DNA from: Fonticula alba ATCC 38817
Lineage: Eukaryota > Protista > Nucleariida
Reading direction: 5' to 3' (one strand)
Assembly: GCA_000388065.2 (NCBI GenBank)
Contig: KB932206.1
Length of the DNA stretch: 41,194 nucleotides
This document shows positions 29,782 through 36,845 of the stretch, one piece after another. Within the stretch, counting starts at the first letter, position 1. Each line of letters starts with the position of its first letter. The position numbers and the translations under genes were made by a program. The notes under the pieces are model-generated. The model had not been told where the DNA came from, did no database searches, and saw only the letters and a program-made list of their open reading frames with translations.

Positions 29782-32647
29782 GAGTGGGTCAGCATACGAA
29801 GGGGGTGGGGAAGGAGATCGCGCAGGGAGTGCCACGTACCAGGAACTCCTCCCCGTCGGTGGCTGCCGCCGCCTGGGCAGAGGCCTTGCCGGCACCGGCG
29901 GCGGCGGCGACTGGCTTCTTGCTGTTGGGGGGGGCTGTGGCCGGAGCCGAGGCAACCTTCTTCTTGGCCTTGCCTATGTTGGCGCGCATGGCCGGGTGTG
30001 GATGGGGCGGCGGGNNNNNNNNNNNNNNNNNNNNNNNNNNNNNNNNNNNNNNNNNNNNNNNNNNNNNNNGCGCCTGCCGCCCCGCGCATTCCGACCATCA
30101 TCCGAATCGGAGTCCGAGTCCAGCACATCGCCAAGGATGGAAACACGGGGCTTCTGGCCGGACGCCAGGGATTCCTCCAGCGACAGGAGCTCCGCCTGCA
30201 TGCCGGACAGGCTGGACAGCCCAGCAGACTTGGGGCCGGGCTTGCCCCTCGATCCGGCCATGAGGCTGGGGTGGCCCTCGTTCTCCGACCCATCCTCATC
30301 CTCATCCTCGGACTCGGACTCGGACTCGGACTCGGACTCGGACTCAGACTCGGACTCGGACTCGGACTCGGACTCGGATTCTGACGCCGACCCAGGCTCC
30401 AACTCGGACTCTGACCCGGGCTCTGACTCATCATCATCATCATCATCATCCTCCTCGGAAGCGCTTTCGCCCTGGGGAACACCCTCGGGCTGGGATTCAG
30501 ACTCGGAATCATCCTCGAACTCGTCCTCCGAGGAGGCAGCCGACATGGCGTCCTCATCCGAGGTGACATACTCGACGTCCTCATCGCTGTTGGCCTGGTC
30601 GTTGGACGCAAAGTACATGGCATCCTCCATGGCCATCTCCTCCTGTAGCTGCTTCATGTTTTGCAGGTGCTTGCGCGACCGGTTGTGGTTCTTCAGCCTG
30701 GTCGCCGAGGAGCGTGAAAGGGGGGCGTGCGTGGGAAAAGGAGCCATCAGTAAACCGACCGCATGCAGGCACATTGCGGGCCGCGGGAGAGGGGAAGGAC
30801 TATCATCCACATTGCCGAGGGGGAGAGGGGGGGCGGGGGCGGGGCAGAGAGAGGACGACGGCACGCACTGCATCTCCGAGCGGAAGGTCTTGTTGCAGGC
30901 CGGGCAGAAGAGCACATCGTCAAAGTCATCCCCATCCGACAGGTCCTCCGGGTCCAGGTGATCCCGGTACGCCGGGTCCAGCAGCCAGGAGGGCGGCTTG
31001 GAAAAGCGCTCGGCCGCGCTGGCCGCACGCTCCTCCTGCTCCTGCTTCTTGCGCTGGTTGTACTCCTCCCGGCGGCGGGCCTCCTCCGCCTGGCGGACCT
31101 GGTCGAAGGCAATCAGACGCCGGTCGCGCTTGGCCACATGTGCCACGAGGTTCTGCGCCGGCCACCGTCGGCCGCCAGGCCACACAAACACATCCCACGT
31201 GTCAGTCGATGCACAGCCAGGGGGGAGGGGGGCGGAGAAGACAAGGGGGGCACAAAGGGGGGCGGCCCTGATGCGCGTACCCGGACCGTGGTGCTGTATT
31301 CGCGCTTCTTGGCGTCGCGCAGTCGGCGGTTCTCCTTCTCATAATACCGCCGGGTGTACCGGTTCGGCATGTCCTGGAAGCTGTCCACCCCGATGCCCAG
31401 ATGCGTGAAGGACTTGTAGGTGGAGAAGTTCATCCACGCCGCGTAGAAGGCCCGCACGTCGGCCTCGGCCGCGCCGCTGTCCCCGAAGGGCGGCAGGTCC
31501 AGGGTGAAGCTGGCGCTCCGGTTGGACATCTTCACCCAGGAGAAGGCGTCCTCCTCCTGCAGGCGCAGCTCCTCAAAGAGGTCTCCGTAAACGACGTAGA
31601 AGCTCTGGTGCCTCCGCCAGGGCCGACACCGGGGAGGGGAAGGGGGGAGGGGGGGGCGGTGGCGAGCCCATGCGAGGGTCAGCGCCGGCGGCGGCGGCGG
31701 AGGGAGAAAAGGCAGCAAGCAGCCCCCGGGGGCAAGGGGACACACGCACAAAGTCGTCGGAATCCGAGAACCCACGGAAGACCGTCGGCTGGAAGTACTG
31801 CTCGAGGTCGATCTCCTCGGCCTCGTCGTCGTCGCCCATGAGGATGGCTACGATGTGTCAGAGGGGGGATGCGGCGCCGGAAACCGGGGGCAAAGGAAGG
31901 GGGGAGGGAGGCGGGCAGCGCGACCGACGCACCTTCGCGGTTCTTGTCATACCTGCGCCGGTGTCCGGGGGGAGGAGGGGGGCGGGAGACGATGGCGGTC
32001 AGTTGGCGTCAGGGGCCCATACGACCTGGGGCCCGGCCAGCACGCACCAGGCCCGCTCATTCGGGTCGCTCAGCACGTCGTAGGCCTTCTTCACCTGGAG
32101 GAAGTGCTTCTGCGCGGTTTCCGGATCGTCCAGGTTCTTGTCTGCGGGCAGGTGTCAGTGACGTGGAGAAGGGCAGGCACGTGTGCGTGTGTGTGTGTGT
32201 GTATGTGGCCGCATCGAAGCTCGCGCGTCTCGGGCGAGCATGTGCCACGCCCTCGGCAGGACAGCCGCCACGAGGCCGAGGCGGTACGCGGCTGCCGCGT
32301 CGCGGGAGGGTGCGCCGACGAGACAAAGATGCATGTGTCGGCTGATGCGGCATGCGCGGGGGGAGGGGGGGCGCATGCGTTCATGCATGCAGGCCGCGCG
32401 CGCGCACACACGGGACAGCGCAGACAGCGAAGACGCATGGACCCCACCCGCCGCAGCACCCTGGCAGGGGGGGGAAGCGGGGGGCGACATTCCGGCGGCC
32501 GAGACAAGGCGCCCGTCGACGCCAGACACAAGCAGGCCAGGACGCACCAGGATGGTACTTGACCGCAAGGCGAAGATACGCGCGGCGGAGTTGCTTTTCA
32601 TCCGCGTCAATCTCCACCTCCAGGAGGGTGTAGTAGCAAGTTCTCAT
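29544..32647 (-). CDS. DNAJC21: DnaJ subfamily C member 21 / Jjj1 (J-domain, two C2H2 zinc fingers; 60S biogenesis co-chaperone)
   Basis: MRTCYYTLLEV..AVKYHP|DKN (HPD split by an intron)..AYDVLSDPNERAW|YD; AFYAAWMNFSTYKSF; EKENRRLRD; LFCPACNKTFRSEMQ|LKNHNRSRKH; acidic (SE)n tract; CQKCRRSFPTRNQMFKHLKDTGH. Confidence 0.92.
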
Positions 32648-33391
32648 GGCTGAGCGGCGCTGTGAGATGGGCGGGCAGGCAGGCAGGGCGACACGTGCAA
32701 GGACGTGGGGGGAGGGAGGGAGAGAGAAAGAAGGAGAGAGAGAGAGGGGGGGGGGAAGGGGGGATATGCCGTGAGCCCCTCTGGCCGGGGGGGGGGGGCT
32801 CGCACGTCGCGCCTTCTTCTCTCCTGTCCTAACCCGCCGGCGCCACGCCGCCGATCATCCGCCTCGGCTCGCCCGCCGGGGCGCAGCAGACACGCAAGCC
32901 GAGGCGCGAGATCGCCGCGTCACCCAGATCGCGCGGGGCGTCTGCCGAGGGAGTGCCAACGATCCCGGCTTGCGCAATCACGCGCCTTCGTGGAAATGTC
33001 ATTCTAGAGGATGAGCTCCCGACGCTCCGGCCAGCTGCCGCGCCGGCGTGTGGCAAACAGCACACCCCAGTCTCGGGAGCCGGGGACGCCCCGAGGAGGG
33101 AGGGGGGGGCTCGGGCAGCTGGGGGACGGACATTTCGTGAACCACTGCCCAACGCCAGCCGGGCCCGGGCCCCAACAGATCTCCCCTCCCCCTCCTCCTG
33201 ATCCGCTCCCCCCTTGCCCCCCCCGTCCGCCCTTCCCCCTCGCCCTCCCCTCGGCCTCTGGCCCCCGGCCCCTTCTAGCTCCCTTCTTTTGGGCATCATC
33301 TCGCTGCCCCTCCCCCCCCCCCTGCACGCCTCTTGCCCCGGGGACATTGGCCCTGCACATACCCACGGTCGCGTGCGTGCACTGCTCGCCG

Positions 33392-35626
33392 ATGCTCTCG
33401 CTCGCGCATAGGGTTCCCATTGGCAACATCCAAGGGCGCGAGGGCCTGTCCCTGGCGACAGCCTCGCGGTCTCTGCCCAGCGTGCAGCGCTCTCGGATTT
33501 CCCTGTGGCCCAATTCCGTGGATGGCCGGCAGCCGGGGCCCTCGGGCCACGGGCGCACCCGCGTGCCGGCCGGTGCCGTGATCGCCTCGAGCGCCGGGTC
33601 GCGGGCGCCGCTGCCGGCCATGGCCGGATCGCTGGCGGCCCTGCCGCACCGGCGGATGGCCTCGCAACCGGGGTTCATCGCGGCGCCGCGGGCCCTGACC
33701 CGGGTGCTGGCCTCGCCGGTGCTGCTCTCGACCAACTTCCTGCTGGGGATCTCCCTGCGCAATCGGGTTCTCTCCTCCATGGACCGGGACATTGCCTGGG
33801 TGTCGCAAATGCGCGACCCGATGTCGGTCATCAGCCATGCGGCACGGGTGCCGGGCTTCATCGAGCCCGGGGTCCGGGCCGCGGCCCGGACGCGCTCCGG
33901 CGATCATCTGGCGGTCCTGGCGCCGGGGGATGTGGCCGCGGCGGCCCTTGCCCAGAGTGGCCTGCCGCCGCGCCAGCGCCGGTGGGCCCTTGCGCAGCAT
34001 GCCCGGGCGGCGGTCCGGCCGGTGGGCCGGTCGCGCCTGTACCGGGCCTCGGACAAGCTGCATGCCGTATCCACGACGGCCATTGTGGCGGGTCAGTCGT
34101 TCGGGCGGCCGAGCAGCATGTGGCGCTTCCTTTCGTCCCAGGCGGTGGCCCTGCCGGGGGCCGATGCCGCGAGCACGGTGCTGTCCAGCCGGGAGGCCCT
34201 GCTGTCGGCGCTGGACACGGTGGCCATCCTCCCCCGGAGGCCCATCAGCCCTGATGCCCTGGCGGCCTTGCGCCGGCTGGAATTCGACGGGGCCCGGGGC
34301 CAGGCGGCGCGCTTCACCGCCATCGGCATCCTGGCGGCCGATGTCCTGGCCAATGCCAAGGACCAATTGGGCGCCAATCCGATGGACAGCTACCGCCCGG
34401 AGGAGGCTCCCTTCCCCGGGCTGAATGACAGCACCCCGCGTACTCGGACCCGGGTGCGGCTCTTGCAGCTGGCGCACTTTAGCACGGCCCTGCAGCAGGA
34501 CCCCACCACCCGGCACTTGGCCCTGTCCATGACCGACATGGCCATCCTGCTGGACAGGGCGCGCACCACCGTGCAAGAGTCCCTCGGGCGCAATATGCCG
34601 GACTTCCGGTCGCCCATGAGCCAGCAGCACCCCTGGCGGCAGGAGGCCCTGGAACTGGCCCGGCAGGGGGTCCCCCTGGCCGAGGTGAGCCGGCGCTTGA
34701 ATCGGCCCGTGGAGACACTGCGGCGGGCCCTGTCGCACTTGGCGCCGGAATACCTGGTGGAAATGGAGACGGCCCAGGCCGCCCGGAGGGCGGAAAGCCG
34801 CGCGGAGGTCATCGCCCTGGCCACCGGGCCGTCGAGCCACACGCACAGCATCAGCAGCATCGCCCGGCAGACGGGGATTTCGATGTACCACGTCCGGTCC
34901 ATTTTGCAGGCCGAGTGCCCGGAGTTCGTGATGCTGCGGTCGGTGTCGTCGGAGCAGCGGGCCCAAATCCGCGCCCTGCTGCTGGCCAGCCCCCAGGAGT
35001 ATGCCATCACCAAGTCCAAGACGCTGGCCGGCCTGGTCAGTGACACCGGCATTCCGGAGCGCATTTTGCTGGTGGCCCTGCGCCAGGCGGCCCTGGACCA
35101 GACATGCCCGCTGGCCTCGCGGGCGCGGGAACTCCTGGCCACGGTGTCGCCGGTGTCGGCCGCCGAACTGCCCCCCGTGGCCCCGGCTGTCGATGGCGCT
35201 CCGCCCGGCCAGGGGCCCGTGGCGGCTGGGGCGGACACCTCCCTGCTCAAGGCCCCGGCTGCGCCCGGCGGCCGGAAGGCCGCCTCGCCGCAGCTGATCG
35301 CCGAAATCGTGCACCTGGCCCGGCAAACCACGGTGACCGTGGTCCACACCCCGACCGCCGAGTACCACCTGACGCGGCGTGCCACCATGGAGGAGATCGC
35401 CAACCAGCTGGGCTGCTCCTTCACCGTGGTCCGGCAGACCATCAACCGTCTGGTGCCGGAGTTCGCGAAGTCCGGCGCGCGCTGTCCCTCGCTGGAGGCC
35501 TACGTCCTGGACTTGGCCCTTCAGACTTCGCCGAAGCTGTCGCTGTCGGAAATCAGCCGCCGCGCGGGGTTCAGCCGCTCGGCCATCAACGCCATCCTGG
35601 CTCGCGTCCTGCCGGCAGCCGACTAG
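33392..35626 (+). CDS. Intronless 744-aa orphan with about six helix-turn-helix-like motifs and an Arg/Ser/Ala-rich N-terminus
   Basis: Long ORF with protein-like composition from ATG 33392 to TAG 35626. HTH-like segments include GVPLAEVSRRLNRPVETLRRAL, SISSIARQTGISMYHVRSIL, ATMEEIANQLGCSFTVVRQTI, LSLSEISRRAGFSRSAINAIL. Confidence 0.8.
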   Translation: MLSLAHRVPIGNIQGREGLSLATASRSLPSVQRSRISLWPNSVDGRQPGPSGHGRTRVPAGAVIASSAGSRAPLPAMAGSLAALPHRRMASQPGFIAAPRALTRVLASPVLLSTNFLLGISLRNRVLSSMDRDIAWVSQMRDPMSVISHAARVPGFIEPGVRAAARTRSGDHLAVLAPGDVAAAALAQSGLPPRQRRWALAQHARAAVRPVGRSRLYRASDKLHAVSTTAIVAGQSFGRPSSMWRFLSSQAVALPGADAASTVLSSREALLSALDTVAILPRRPISPDALAALRRLEFDGARGQAARFTAIGILAADVLANAKDQLGANPMDSYRPEEAPFPGLNDSTPRTRTRVRLLQLAHFSTALQQDPTTRHLALSMTDMAILLDRARTTVQESLGRNMPDFRSPMSQQHPWRQEALELARQGVPLAEVSRRLNRPVETLRRALSHLAPEYLVEMETAQAARRAESRAEVIALATGPSSHTHSISSIARQTGISMYHVRSILQAECPEFVMLRSVSSEQRAQIRALLLASPQEYAITKSKTLAGLVSDTGIPERILLVALRQAALDQTCPLASRARELLATVSPVSAAELPPVAPAVDGAPPGQGPVAAGADTSLLKAPAAPGGRKAASPQLIAEIVHLARQTTVTVVHTPTAEYHLTRRATMEEIANQLGCSFTVVRQTINRLVPEFAKSGARCPSLEAYVLDLALQTSPKLSLSEISRRAGFSRSAINAILARVLPAAD

Positions 35627-35762
35627 CGGTGCTGTGTGTGTGTGCCTCTTGTCTCTCTCTCTCTCTCTCTTTTCCTCTTCGCGTGTGGCGTGTCTGCCGT
35701 GTTTGGCACGCGCGTGCCCGGGCCTGGTCTCCTCCTCTCCCCACGGGCGCCACATGTCCCTG

Positions 35763-35781
35763 CACGACGCTCTTCCGATCT
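35763..35781 (+). other. Illumina adapter remnant (CACGACGCTCTTCCGATCT) between a false 189-bp duplication (35574-35762 / 35782-35970)
   Basis: Exact match to the 3' end of the Illumina Read 1 primer sequence as recalled; flanked by identical copies. Confidence 0.95.
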
Positions 35782-36106
35782 GCCGCTCGGCCATCAACGC
35801 CATCCTGGCTCGCGTCCTGCCGGCAGCCGACTAGCGGTGCTGTGTGTGTGTGCCTCTTGTCTCTCTCTCTCTCTCTCTTTTCCTCTTCGCGTGTGGCGTG
35901 TCTGCCGTGTTTGGCACGCGCGTGCCCGGGCCTGGTCTCCTCCTCTCCCCACGGGCGCCACATGTCCCTGTCCTTGAATTCAAAAACATTCCCCGATGAC
36001 TGTGTTGTCTCTGCTTGCAGGGCCGCACTTTCGTGTGTCTTTTGTGTATTTCTTTCCCTGGTCCCTCTTTTGTGTGTCGGTTTTCTTCCATGTCTTTTTC
36101 CATCTT

Positions 36107-36134
36107 ATACGATATTACAAGGTGACTGGAGTTC
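36107..36134 (+). other. Illumina indexed PCR primer remnant (ATACGA[T]ATTACAAGGTGACTGGAGTTC; index TACAAG) between a false 94-bp duplication (36013-36106 / 36135-36228)
   Basis: One mismatch to ...ATACGAGAT-TACAAG-GTGACTGGAGTTC as recalled; flanked by identical copies. Confidence 0.92.
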
Positions 36135-36845
36135 GCTTGCAGGGCCGCACTTTCGTGTGTCTTTTGTGTATTTCTTTCCCTGGTCCCTCTTTTGTGTGTC
36201 GGTTTTCTTCCATGTCTTTTTCCATCTTCCGAGCCTTCTGTGCATTTTCCCTCTTCTGCCCCCTCCCCGCCTGTCGCCCGCCCTTTGCATCGCCTTGCGC
36301 CTTCCCCTGCGGCCCTCCTGCCTCCCCCGGCTCCTGTGCCCTCCCCGTGGCCTGTGTTCCTTTCATTGTCGCCCCACACACGTGTCCTTGCCATCTCCCA
36401 TGCTCGGGACTCCCATGTGCACCTTTGCCCTCGCTGCTCCTTGTGCGTGCCGTTTGGGGTGACCTTGTTGTGCCTGCCCGGGATGCCCCCCCGGATGCCC
36501 GACCGCGCGAGTGACAACACGGATTTTATTTTTGCCCAAAGTGCATGAGAGGCCCCGCGCCCGGGTCTCTGGTACTTTTCCTGCCCGCCCTCCCTGCACA
36601 TGCGCCACAGACATGTACATGCGCAGAGTCACGCGCAATCCACCATATGTACCTGCTCTCGTTTTCGCCCCGGTTCGCACAACAATATGCAAGAGAGAGA
36701 GAGAGAGAGAGAGCGAGGAAGAGAGAAAGACAGAGACACGGGGCGCGTCGCGCCACACGGGCGGAGAGAGCAGAGAGAAGGGGAAGGCGCGAGAGAAAGA
36801 GAGAAAGAGAGACCGGGAGAGGGAGGGGGAGGCCCCGCGCGCATG

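What the first reader, a model, noticed from the sequence alone, without database searches (positions are those of the whole stretch)
33392..35626. Intronless orphan with about six tandem bacterial-style helix-turn-helix motifs and a presequence-like N-terminus
The C-terminal half carries repeated HTH-pattern segments (hydrophobic-x-x-I/V-A/S-x-x-x-G/N-hydrophobic-S/P): LSMTDMAILLDRARTTVQESL, GVPLAEVSRRLNRPVETLRRAL, SISSIARQTGISMYHVRSIL, TLAGLVSDTGIPERILLVAL, ATMEEIANQLGCSFTVVRQTI, LSLSEISRRAGFSRSAINAIL. Several are preceded by a helix of the type ..EALELARQG / ..EVIALAT / ..EIVHLARQ, typical of tri-helical Hin/sigma-region-4/transposase HTH domains. No DDE catalytic domain, terminal repeats or introns are visible, whereas every neighbouring gene has introns. 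The N-terminus is rich in Arg/Ser/Leu/Ala and poor in acidic residues. Inference: a horizontally acquired, retroposed or transposase-derived poly-HTH nucleic-acid-binding protein, possibly targeted to mitochondria as a nucleoid or transcription factor.
Basis: partly seen in the sequence, partly recalled or inferred. Interest (0 to 1): 0.72.

Follow-up and report, generated by a model that had tools for sequence, protein, structure and literature searches.

The report
Diverged Fonticula tandem-HTH array protein
This expressed, intron-free gene of the amoeba Fonticula alba makes a protein whose rear half is a string of four clear and two worn DNA-gripping helix-turn-helix modules. It is not a lone orphan: it is a far-diverged member of an undescribed family of about thirty such genes seen only in this species, and whether it works in mitochondria remains open.

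Summary
The ORF at 33392-35626 (+) is a real, unspliced, transcribed gene of 744 aa. Its first AUG is fixed by RNA contigs that start at about 33322. Four units (R1, R2, R4, R5) are solid by Pfam, by an independent profile and by AlphaFold. R3 is supported by the fold only, and R0 is degenerate.

The protein has no orthologue among 1.84 billion representative proteins. It is not a singleton, however. A profile of its repeats finds about 30 other long open frames in the same genome. They are built from the same module (family repeat consensus begins RLLALARRTPPLSLAEIA...), which ends in an invariant Pro within a P-(E/D)-(Y/F) tail. This scan had already flagged the family on other DNA of this genome (s1-065373, s1-065573, s1-065450). 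I reached it independently before reading those notes.

No DDE domain, terminal repeats or extra copies were found, and codon usage is native (GC3 0.90). A transposon or a recent gene transfer is therefore unsupported. Mitochondrial targeting is roughly even odds for this member. Many paralogues carry the species' typical presequence ending in R-A-F-S-S, but this protein's leader is atypical. Two Illumina adapter artefacts lie just 3' of the gene.

The parts
33322..35996 (+). Transcribed unit, unspliced. The leader is about 70 nt. The trailer is about 160 nt once the artefactual 208-bp duplication is removed.
   Evidence: contigs of four runs start at 33322-33328 and end at 35994-35996. There is no cover at 32891-33288. 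The runs are shown to be RNA because they skip three CT..AC introns in the upstream minus-strand gene.
33392..35626 (+). Coding sequence of 744 aa (P0001). It starts at the first ATG of the transcript.
   Evidence: no other ATG in 33322-33391. GC3 is 0.897 in this frame, against 0.56-0.70 at the other two codon positions.
33392..33781 (+). aa 1-130: an acid-poor, Arg/Ser/Leu/Ala/Gly/Pro-rich leader with 15 K+R and 2 D+E. It starts MLSLAHR and ends in R-V-L-S-S at aa 125-129. It is either a possible long import presequence or a disordered basic arm.
   Evidence: AlphaFold gives no secondary structure in aa 1-100 at pLDDT about 32.
33782..34456 (+). aa 131-355: a helical region of unknown fold with no repeat module and no Pfam match.
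   Evidence: pLDDT 28-52; best module score 5.0 bits, within the range of shuffles.
34457..34606 (+). Repeat R0 (aa 356-405): a degenerate module whose tail is M-P-D-F.
   Evidence: Leave-target-out profile 8.5 bits against a shuffle maximum of 6.3. No Pfam match on its own. AlphaFold predicts one long helix instead of a turn.
34643..34753 (+). Repeat R1 (aa 418-454): an HTH module whose tail is A-P-E-Y.
   Evidence: HTH_23 match at aa 415-449. 24.9 bits with the leave-target-out profile. pLDDT 89-91. VIA Z 5.3 to Tc3A and to Tn3 resolvase HTH.
34802..34927 (+). Repeat R2 (aa 471-512): an HTH module whose tail is C-P-E-F.
   Evidence: 26.1 bits. pLDDT 81-89. VIA Z 5.6-5.9 to winged-HTH regulators.
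34961..35110 (+). Repeat R3 (aa 524-573): a module worn at sequence level, with an insertion between helices 1 and 2 and only a Pro left of the tail.
   Evidence: 2.5 bits and no Pfam match on its own, but three helices at pLDDT about 80-85.
35111..35299 (+). aa 574-636: a Pro/Ala-rich linker, predicted disordered. It splits the array into 4 + 2 modules.
   Evidence: model residues 241-275 have pLDDT 28-37.
35300..35464 (+). Repeat R4 (aa 637-691): an HTH module with an inserted beta-hairpin between helices 1 and 2. Its tail is V-P-E-F.
   Evidence: 25.7 bits. 18.4 bits with a profile made only from the bacterial protein P0002. Pfam HTH_AsnC-type, HTH_Mga and HTH_11. VIA Z 6.2 to a Myb domain.
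35498..35614 (+). Repeat R5 (aa 703-741): an HTH module whose tail is L-P-A-A, followed by the C-terminus.
   Evidence: Sigma70_r4 at aa 715-740. 21.3 bits. VIA Z 5.4-5.6 to Lrp/AsnC HTH.

Best explanation
The gene encodes a far-diverged member of a Fonticula alba-restricted family of tandem helix-turn-helix array proteins.

The module. Each module is a small three-helix bundle: helix 1 (R-L-L-x-L-A), a Pro-containing loop, helix 2 (L-S-x-x-E-I-A-x-x-L-G), a turn, and recognition helix 3 (S-x-x-T-V-R-R-x-L-R-R). It closes with an invariant Pro in a P-(E/D)-(Y/F) tail. Scaffold positions are conserved. The exposed positions of helix 3 are the most variable.

This protein. It has four good and two worn modules, arranged 4 + 2 around a disordered Pro/Ala linker.

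Inferred mechanism. Successive recognition helices read successive stretches of a long or bipartite nucleic-acid site, most likely double-stranded DNA. This is how Tc3A, paired domains, Myb repeats and Cbp1 work.

The front half. The 355-aa front half has no recognisable fold. Its first 130 residues are an acid-poor basic leader that may be a long mitochondrial import signal (about even odds) or a disordered arm.

Shown: transcription, the start codon, the module fold and number, family membership, and the absence of outside orthologues. Inferred: nucleic-acid binding, its specificity, and the compartment.
For: The gene is real. RNA contigs cover 33322-35996 unspliced, and the first ATG is at 33392. 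GC3 is 0.897 in both halves.

The HTH modules are real. Four Pfam HTH families score above their own cut-offs. AlphaFold gives pLDDT 77-91 for R1-R3. All leading structure matches are three-helix DNA-binding domains such as Tc3A, resolvase, Myb, homeodomain and winged HTH, at Z 5-6.

The family is real.
- The repeat profile A1 finds 13 further matches in other open frames. The 32-repeat profile A2 finds 75 matches in about 30 open frames.
- Only 32 of 452 long open frames in all the fetched DNA hit the profile, each in the expected frame.
- The leave-target-out profile scores four target modules at 21-26 bits, against a shuffle maximum of 6.3.
- The paralogues carry HTH-type Pfam families almost exclusively; the one other hit is a sub-threshold TFIIA match in L021.

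The family is species-restricted. The exhaustive search gave only two outside proteins, at E 6e-8 and 4e-6. Word searches with two other family queries returned only F. alba H696_ hypothetical proteins.

Variability pattern. Entropy is 3.0-3.6 bits at helix-3 positions 25-27 and 29-31, against 0-1.5 bits at L5, P10, A18, G22 and P37.

Leader. Annotated subfamily-A paralogues have acid-free basic leaders ending in R-(A/G)-F-S-S. This is the motif seen in this species' ATP synthase alpha-type subunit, MnSOD and ISCU precursors.
Against: - No binding experiment or target sequence exists.
- Z 5-6 is a common level for small helical domains (note), and the Foldseek search of the whole model found nothing significant.
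- The inter-module geometry is unreliable (pTM 0.40).
- Two of the six modules are degenerate.
- The N-terminal half is unmodelled (pLDDT 38) and shares nothing with the paralogues.

Against mitochondrial import of this member:
- There is a Glu at residue 17, and Gly and Pro are frequent near the start.
- No amphipathic helix is predicted.
- Its hydrophobic moment, charge and first-acid position do not differ from composition-matched background frames.
- A 127-aa presequence would be four to five times longer than the 20-30-aa leaders seen in two calibrators (ATP synthase alpha-type subunit, ISCU).
- One paralogue (H696_00212) starts with an acidic stretch and a K-R-P-R motif.
Confidence: 0.72

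Rival explanations
1. The protein is a nuclear sequence-specific transcription factor or chromatin protein. The HTH array reads nuclear DNA, and the basic leader is only a disordered arm, not an import signal.
For: HTH arrays are classic double-stranded DNA readers. About 30 diversified paralogues fit a lineage-specific transcription-factor expansion better than the needs of a small mitochondrial genome. The paralogue H696_00212 has an acidic start and a K-R-P-R motif. The target's leader fails my presequence criterion, and its features match background.
Against: The target has no clear classical nuclear localisation signal, with only 1.1% Lys. Many paralogues carry the same R-x-F-S-S leader end as bona fide matrix proteins of this species. 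The target's acid-free stretch ends in R-V-L-S-S at aa 125-129.
Confidence: 0.4
2. The gene is a domesticated transposase DNA-binding domain or a horizontally acquired bacterial or phage poly-HTH gene, taken up once as a singleton.
For: The Pfam and NCBIfam hits are to transposase-type HTH families: HTH_23, HTH_Tnp_ISL3, IS21 and IS630. The only outside matches are tandem-HTH proteins from metagenomes. One of them, P0002, shares the R-R-I-A-P-E tail and lies beside a phage-integrase fragment. The gene is intronless.
Against: There is no DDE domain, and the NCBIfam transposase scores are far below their cut-offs (21.4 against 160, and 12.4 against 100). There are no terminal inverted repeats. 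The gene is single copy. Every HTH_23 match in the genome belongs to this family and none to a transposase. Codon usage is native. About 30 paralogues in tandem clusters point to expansion within the genome. Identity to P0002 is only 30%, over one module.
Confidence: 0.12
3. The array binds RNA rather than DNA. It would act as an organellar RNA-maturation or translation factor, as PPR, OPR, HPR and mTERF proteins do.
For: A nuclear, expanded, fast-diverging family of helical repeat proteins with organelle-type leaders is the hallmark of such factors (known biology; review PMC8635915 listed). Tandem winged-helix domains can read RNA: SelB, PDB 1lva, appeared among the weak Foldseek rows.
Against: The modules match DNA-binding HTH families. 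There is no PPR, mTERF, RAP or FAST match at E <= 1. Import is not shown.
Confidence: 0.15
4. The ORF is spurious, a chance open frame in 70% GC DNA, and the transcript is non-coding.
For: Long open frames occur in all frames here, for example the 835-aa antisense ORF.
Against: There are Pfam matches above the curated cut-offs only in this frame. GC3 is 0.90 in this frame alone. Repeat modules are shared with about 30 other genes. The fold is predicted confidently.
Confidence: 0.02

Closest known systems
Hin / resolvase / Tc3A-type three-helix HTH domains (Pfam HTH_23, HTH_7, HTH_38; homeodomain-like fold)
   Same: The module has the same fold and sequence pattern: helix 1, then a hydrophobic-x-x-I-A-x-x-x-G turn, then a recognition helix. 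HTH_23 scores above its cut-off. VIA Z is 5.3-5.4 to Tc3A, to the Tc3 bipartite domain and to Tn3 resolvase.
   Different: No recombinase or DDE catalytic domain is attached. There are six modules in a row instead of one or two. There is an added invariant Pro-(E/D)-(Y/F) tail. The gene is eukaryotic, nuclear and single copy.
Archaeal CRISPR-repeat-binding proteins Cbp1/Cbp2 (tandem HTH; PDB 2lvs)
   Same: Several small HTH modules are joined head to tail and read one long DNA site. There is weak sequence similarity (2lvs E 0.11; NCBIfam HTH_Cbp1 23.3 bits).
   Different: The score is far below the family cut-off of 140 bits. Cbp proteins have two or three modules and nothing else. There is no CRISPR context in a eukaryote.
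Bacterial and phage tandem-HTH array proteins (P0002, 259 aa with 5 modules; P0003, 818 aa with about 13 modules; ESM Atlas clusters with HTH_23 or Sigma70_r4/SpoIIID)
   Same: These are the only outside matches in 1.84 billion proteins (E 6e-8 and 4e-6). They have the same head-to-tail HTH architecture. P0002 shares the basic helix-3 end plus the A-P-E tail. The Atlas structural neighbours are of this kind.
   Different: Identity is 26-30% at module level only. They have no long N-terminal region. Their own function is unknown. All TM-scores are <= 0.27.
Eukaryotic multi-HTH DNA readers: Myb R1R2R3, the paired domain, Pipsqueak repeats, CENP-B (from general knowledge)
   Same: They work alike: consecutive three-helix modules dock their third helices in successive major-groove sites.
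   Different: The target has no Pfam match to Myb, PAX, HTH_psq or CENP-B_N. Only two paralogues show sub-threshold CENP-B_N hits.
Organellar helical-repeat families (PPR, OPR, HPR, mTERF)
   Same: The family-level picture is alike: nuclear, expanded, tandemly duplicated and fast-diverging repeat proteins, many with organelle-type leaders.
   Different: The repeat fold is different (three-helix HTH, not helical hairpins). There is no Pfam match. Organelle import and RNA binding are not shown.

Membership tests
Pfam HTH_23 / homeodomain-like HTH clan | Profile score above the curated gathering cut-off | tested here: met
   38.7 bits against 24.6 for the whole protein. R1 alone scores 24.3 bits, just under the cut-off.
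Pfam HTH_23 / homeodomain-like HTH clan | Three-helix bundle with a helix-turn-helix | tested here: met
   AlphaFold models R1-R3 at pLDDT 77-91 with three helices each. VIA gives Z 5.2-6.2 to Tc3A, resolvase, Myb and homeodomain structures. R0 is not modelled as an HTH.
DDE transposases with an N-terminal HTH (IS630/Tc1-mariner, ISL3, IS30, IS21) | DDE/rve catalytic domain | tested here: not met
   No such Pfam family at E <= 1. NCBIfam IS21 scores 21.4 against 160, and IS630 12.4 against 100.
DDE transposases with an N-terminal HTH (IS630/Tc1-mariner, ISL3, IS30, IS21) | Terminal inverted repeats and multiple copies | tested here: not met
   The only inverted pairs that span the gene are AG/CT microsatellites. 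There is one copy in the genome.
Sigma-70 factors | Region 2 (core binding and -10 recognition) as well as region 4 | tested here: not met
   Only region-4 and region-3-like HTH hits appear. There is no Sigma70_r2 match.
Cbp1 CRISPR repeat-binding protein (NCBIfam NF040595) | Equivalog score above 140 bits | tested here: not met
   23.3 bits.
Fonticula tandem-HTH array family (undescribed; earlier notes s1-065373, s1-065573, s1-065450) | Modules recognised by a profile built from other members | tested here: met
   The leave-target-out profile scores 24.9, 26.1, 25.7 and 21.3 bits for R1, R2, R4 and R5. The shuffle maximum is 6.3.
Fonticula tandem-HTH array family (undescribed; earlier notes s1-065373, s1-065573, s1-065450) | Invariant Pro within a P-(E/D)-(Y/F) tail after helix 3 | tested here: met
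   Full tails are A-P-E-Y, C-P-E-F, V-P-E-F and M-P-D-F in four units. The Pro alone remains in R3 and R5.
Fonticula tandem-HTH array family (undescribed; earlier notes s1-065373, s1-065573, s1-065450) | Architecture: a non-repeat N-terminal region followed by a C-terminal array, with almost no other Pfam domain | tested here: met
   In the target the array spans aa 356-741 of 744. In the paralogues it typically starts at aa 200-500. The paralogues carry HTH-type Pfam families almost exclusively; the one other hit is a sub-threshold TFIIA match in L021.
Fonticula tandem-HTH array family (undescribed; earlier notes s1-065373, s1-065573, s1-065450) | Mitochondrial-type leader ending in R-x-F-S-S, as in subfamily A | tested here: inconclusive
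   The target starts MLSLAHR. Its first 130 aa are acid-poor and contain R-R-M-A-S at aa 87-91 and R-V-L-S-S at aa 125-129. It also has Glu17 and no predicted helix. The chance of an R-x-(F/Y/L)-S-S in such a stretch is about 0.05 by my own estimate.
PPR / mTERF / RAP-FAST organellar repeat proteins | A match to the family repeat profiles | tested here: not met
   None at E <= 1 in Pfam.

The most novel reading that the evidence does not exclude
The family, this gene included, may be a new class of organellar repeat protein. It would be a nuclear-encoded, tandemly duplicating, fast-diverging set of mitochondrion-imported HTH arrays, each reading a specific mitochondrial DNA or RNA site. That would be a DNA-binding-fold analogue of PPR, OPR and mTERF proteins. 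It might be locked in an arms race with the repeated selfish-looking gene cassettes that earlier notes of this scan report in Fonticula mitochondrial DNA, much as restorer-of-fertility PPR genes counter selfish mitochondrial ORFs in plants.
Probability: 0.15. Interest if true: 0.85.

Novelty: new variant of a known kind. Interest (0 to 1): 0.58.

Why it matters
Arrays of bacterial-type helix-turn-helix modules are rare as a eukaryotic protein architecture. Here one species has built about thirty genes from one such module, which carries its own signature tail. The exposed recognition positions differ from module to module. That is the pattern of a programmable, modular nucleic-acid reader, as in zinc-finger arrays, TALEs and PPR proteins.

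If many members are indeed imported into mitochondria, this would be the first organellar repeat family built on a DNA-binding HTH fold. It would also give a handle on how Fonticula expresses or polices its unusual mitochondrial genome.

For this particular gene the practical gain is smaller. It is shown to be a real, expressed and very diverged member, which widens the known sequence range of the family.

Tried and rejected
- A pairwise six-frame search of the genome with the whole protein found only the gene itself. This wrongly suggested a singleton, and only the repeat profile revealed the family.
- The word search and the feature search in the ESM Atlas found nothing.
- A Foldseek search of the multi-module model against the PDB had no match at E <= 0.001. 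The flexible multi-domain model is unsuited to global comparison.
- The Atlas fold search gave TM <= 0.27.
- Sequence search against the PDB gave only 2lvs at E 0.11, plus chance pteridine reductase rows on the Pro/Ala linker.
- The N-terminal half has no Pfam match, no repeat module above shuffles, and pLDDT 38.
- P0002's genomic context (RecD2-like helicase, DUF7986, integrase fragment) said nothing about function, and its DNA could not be fetched.
- Looking up P0001's contig by exact protein gave no record.
- My presequence criterion gave 11 of 31 family frames against 16 of 311 background frames. I chose it after seeing the sequences. The single features do not differ from background, and the target itself fails it, so I give it little weight.
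- 'Subtelomeric' for subfamily A is rejected as a claim. Many copies lie within a few kb of contig ends, but no telomere repeats are present there. Contigs may simply break at these 60-86% identical copies.
- An octotricopeptide (OPR) relationship, suggested by the P-E-(Y/F/W) tail, is rejected. From memory of the OPR consensus, the Gly-to-Pro spacing is 15 residues here against about 3 in OPR, and the modules match HTH profiles.
- Five literature searches found no description of the family.
Full report
**1. What is at the coordinates**

The window is about 70% GC. Protein records retrieved later show that it comes from Fonticula alba (H696_ locus tags). It lies on a 2.53-Mb contig, about 200 kb from the contig's end.

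The open frame runs from 33011 to 35626 (871 aa). RNA evidence sets the start at 33392:
- Contigs of four runs (two samples, one study) begin at 33322-33328 and leave 32891-33288 uncovered. They run colinear with the genome to about 35995.
- Those runs are on record only as 'RNA?'. They must be RNA, because they skip three CT..AC (GT..AG on the minus strand) introns in the upstream gene: 31153-31280, 31605-31749 and 32142-32547.
- The 70-nt leader holds no other ATG.

GC3 is 0.897 in this frame (0.879 in the N-terminal half, 0.913 in the C-terminal half), against 0.56-0.70 at the other two codon positions. This resembles the paralogues, at 0.76-0.90. The 835-aa antisense ORF shares the same triplet boundaries. 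It is the usual mirror frame of a high-GC3 gene, and it has no Pfam match.

**2. The helix-turn-helix modules**

Pfam scores the protein above its own cut-offs for HTH_23, HTH_Tnp_ISL3, Sigma70_r4 and HTH_28. It also lists some 25 further HTH families below cut-off, all in aa 405-744.

These share helix 1, a Pro loop, helix 2, a Gly turn, helix 3 and a tail x-P-(E/D)-(F/Y).

| Unit | Residues | Leave-target-out profile (bits) | Other evidence |
|---|---|---|---|
| R0 | 356-405 | 8.5 | no Pfam match alone; AlphaFold gives one long helix |
| R1 | 418-454 | 24.9 | Pfam match alone; pLDDT 89-91 |
| R2 | 471-512 | 26.1 | only a marginal Pfam match alone (HTH_29, E 0.08, 13.5 bits); pLDDT 81-89 |
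| R3 | 524-573 | 2.5 | no Pfam match alone; three helices at pLDDT about 80-85 |
| R4 | 637-691 | 25.7 | Pfam match alone; same helix pattern at pLDDT 34-58, with a beta-hairpin insert |
| R5 | 703-741 | 21.3 | Pfam match alone; same helix pattern at pLDDT 34-58 |

The maximum over 300 shuffles of the protein is 6.3 bits. A profile made only from the bacterial protein P0002 still scores R4 at 18.4 and R5 at 6.4 bits, against a shuffle maximum of 4.9.

Structure comparison with every PDB representative returns only three-helix nucleic-acid-binding domains at the top. These include Myb, Tc3A (1tc3, 1u78), Tn3 and other serine-recombinase HTH domains, homeodomains, Lrp/AsnC and winged HTH, at Z 5.1-6.2. 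The level is modest, but it is consistent across the list.

The verdict is four solid modules, one supported by fold only, and one degenerate. They are arranged 4 + 2 around a 63-aa Pro/Ala linker predicted to be disordered.

**3. Not a singleton**

- A pairwise search of the genome found only the gene itself.
- The word search found only the protein itself.
- The exhaustive scan of 1.84 billion representatives added two metagenomic tandem-HTH proteins. P0002 has 259 aa and five near-identical modules ending R-R-I-A-P-E-A. P0003 has 818 aa and about 13 modules.
- A profile of the six repeats, however, hit a dozen other long open frames in the same genome.
- Every HTH_23 match in the genome falls in this set, and none in a transposase.
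- Iterating on 13 frames gave 75 modules. The family repeat consensus begins RLLALARRTPPLSLAEIA and ends in R-R-H-C-P-E-Y.
- A 32-module alignment (A2) then found 75 matches in about 30 open frames of 350-1700 aa.
- Specificity is good. Of 452 open frames of 250 aa or more in all six frames of the fetched DNA, only the 32 expected ones hit.
- Pfam finds HTH-type families almost exclusively in 19 paralogues; the one other hit is a sub-threshold TFIIA match in L021.

BLAST splits the set:
- A subfamily of about 20 genes is 32-86% identical over about 600 aa. Members are often in tandem and often within a few kb of contig ends.
- The remaining members are dispersed and related only module by module.
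- The target has no BLAST partner at 1e-5, so it is one of the most diverged.

Word searches with the 13-module paralogue and with a subfamily profile returned only F. alba hypothetical proteins. The database includes EukProt. Earlier notes of this scan (s1-065373, s1-065573, s1-065450) describe the same family on other DNA. I read them, and they agree with what I found. The 1,559-aa giant of s1-065450 is my locus L014, where I count 15 modules.

**4. How it probably works**

Across the 75 modules the scaffold is conserved: L5 85%, P10 85%, A18 73%, G22 69%, L32 66% and the tail Pro 100%. The positions of helix 3 that face outward in HTH domains are the most variable, at 3.0-3.6 bits.

That is the signature of a modular reader in which each module contributes its own contacts. 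I infer binding of a long or bipartite site, most likely double-stranded DNA, as established for Tc3A, paired, Myb and Cbp1 arrays. RNA cannot be excluded. The role of the P-(E/D)-(Y/F) tail is inferred. It may cap helix 3 and pack the aromatic residue. In the model the tail of R1 runs into a long helix that becomes helix 1 of R2. The pTM of 0.40 makes inter-module geometry unreliable.

**5. Compartment**

- The ATP synthase alpha-type subunit starts with a basic, acid-free leader ending T-R-A-F-S-T-S.
- MnSOD has R-R-A-F-T-S just before the mature domain.
- ISCU starts M-L-S-R-F-A-S-L-Q-R and ends P-R-R-F-Y.

Annotated subfamily-A proteins have just such leaders, ending R-A-F-S-S, R-G-F-S-S, R-G-L-S-S or R-E-F-S-S some 10-65 residues in. 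Import is therefore plausible for many members.

For the target the picture is mixed:
- In favour: it starts M-L-S-L-A-H-R. Its first 130 aa hold 15 basic and 2 acidic residues. The acid-free stretch ends in R-V-L-S-S at aa 125-129, with R-R-M-A-S at aa 87-91.
- Against: it has Glu17 and many Gly and Pro residues, and no predicted helix. A 127-aa leader would be unusually long.
- Charge, first-acid position and hydrophobic moment of family leaders do not differ from composition-matched background frames in this Arg-rich genome.
- One paralogue begins with an acidic stretch and K-R-P-R.

I put mitochondrial import of this member at about 0.45.

**6. Origin**

Nothing supports a transposon. There is no DDE domain, and the NCBIfam transposase scores are far below their cut-offs. 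There are no terminal inverted repeats, and there is only one copy.

Nothing supports a recent transfer either. Codon usage is native. The gene has a normal eukaryotic setting with its own leader and trailer, and it is divergently placed about 620 bp from a zuotin-like J-protein gene (DnaJ and ZUO1-like domains in separate exons).

The shared basic helix-3 end plus Pro-Glu tail with P0002 leaves an ancient bacterial or phage origin of the module possible but untested. Tandem clusters point to growth of the family by local duplication.

**7. Assembly artefacts beside the gene**

Two fragments of Illumina adapters are embedded just 3' of the stop. Each sits exactly between two copies of a direct repeat.
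- 35762-35781 (G-C-A-C-G-A-C-G-C-T-C-T-T-C-C-G-A-T-C-T) lies between 35571-35762 and 35779-35970.
- 36107-36134 is an index-primer piece ending in G-T-G-A-C-T-G-G-A-G-T-T-C. It lies between the 100% identical 36013-36106 and 36135-36228.

The RNA contigs carry a single copy of the first repeat. The coding sequence is unaffected, because the first copy is contiguous with it.

The exons of the upstream gene were searched one by one, by reference, and were not joined.

Noticed in passing
window 35571-35970: An Illumina adapter fragment at 35762-35781 sits exactly between two copies of a 192-nt direct repeat (35571-35762 and 35779-35970). The repeat duplicates the last 56 nt of the coding sequence plus the 3' UTR. 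RNA contigs hold one copy only, so this is an assembly artefact. The second copy creates a false ORF end (151-aa ORF 35379-35834).
   Followed up: yes
window 36013-36228: A second adapter-type insert lies at 36107-36134. It ends in an index-like hexamer plus the start of the Illumina read-2 primer sequence. It sits between two 100% identical 94-nt direct repeats, and the region has no RNA cover. It is probably another assembly artefact.
   Followed up: partly
window 31100-32700 (minus strand): The upstream, divergently transcribed neighbour is a zuotin-like J-protein. The DnaJ domain is in exon 32548-32647 and the ZUO1-like homology domain in exon 31281-31604. RNA contigs confirm three GT..AG introns (31153-31280, 31605-31749, 32142-32547).
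   Followed up: partly
window 33296-35803 (minus strand): An 835-aa antisense ORF lies in the mirror frame of the gene, with the same triplet boundaries. It has no Pfam match. It is a by-product of GC3 0.90, which makes the reverse complements of stop codons rare.
   Followed up: yes
G000 C16:1-6000, C4:1-6000, C22:1-6000, C11:1-6000, C15:1-10000, C10:1-10000, C7:2145500-2153500, C14:527000-537000 (L025-L030, L036, L016): About 20 mutually 32-86% identical family members (subfamily A) sit in tandem pairs or triplets, often within a few kb of contig ends. Some are broken by N runs or truncated by the contig end. No telomere repeats are seen at those ends, so this may be a subtelomeric location or merely assembly breaks at repeated genes.
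   Followed up: partly
P0005-P0013; L043, L039, L051: Bona fide matrix proteins of this species (ATP synthase alpha-type subunit, MnSOD, ISCU) and the annotated subfamily-A HTH-array proteins share a leader end of the form R-(A/G/R)-F-(S/T/Y)-(S/T). This is a species-typical processing-site motif that could serve to screen the whole proteome.
   Followed up: partly
P0002 (metagenome contig, sample ERZ21830300): This 259-aa bacterial-type protein has five near-identical 53-aa HTH modules ending R-R-I-A-P-E-A. It lies next to a phage-integrase fragment and a RecD2-like helicase. It is the closest outside look-alike of the Fonticula module, and its function is unknown.
   Followed up: partly
L018 (G000 C1:977000-986000), protein P0004 = H696_00212: This is the family member with the most canonical modules (13). 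Its annotated model needs an upstream exon, because the first Met of the open frame lies after three modules. It starts with an acidic stretch and a K-R-P-R motif, unlike the presequence-type leaders of other members.
   Followed up: no
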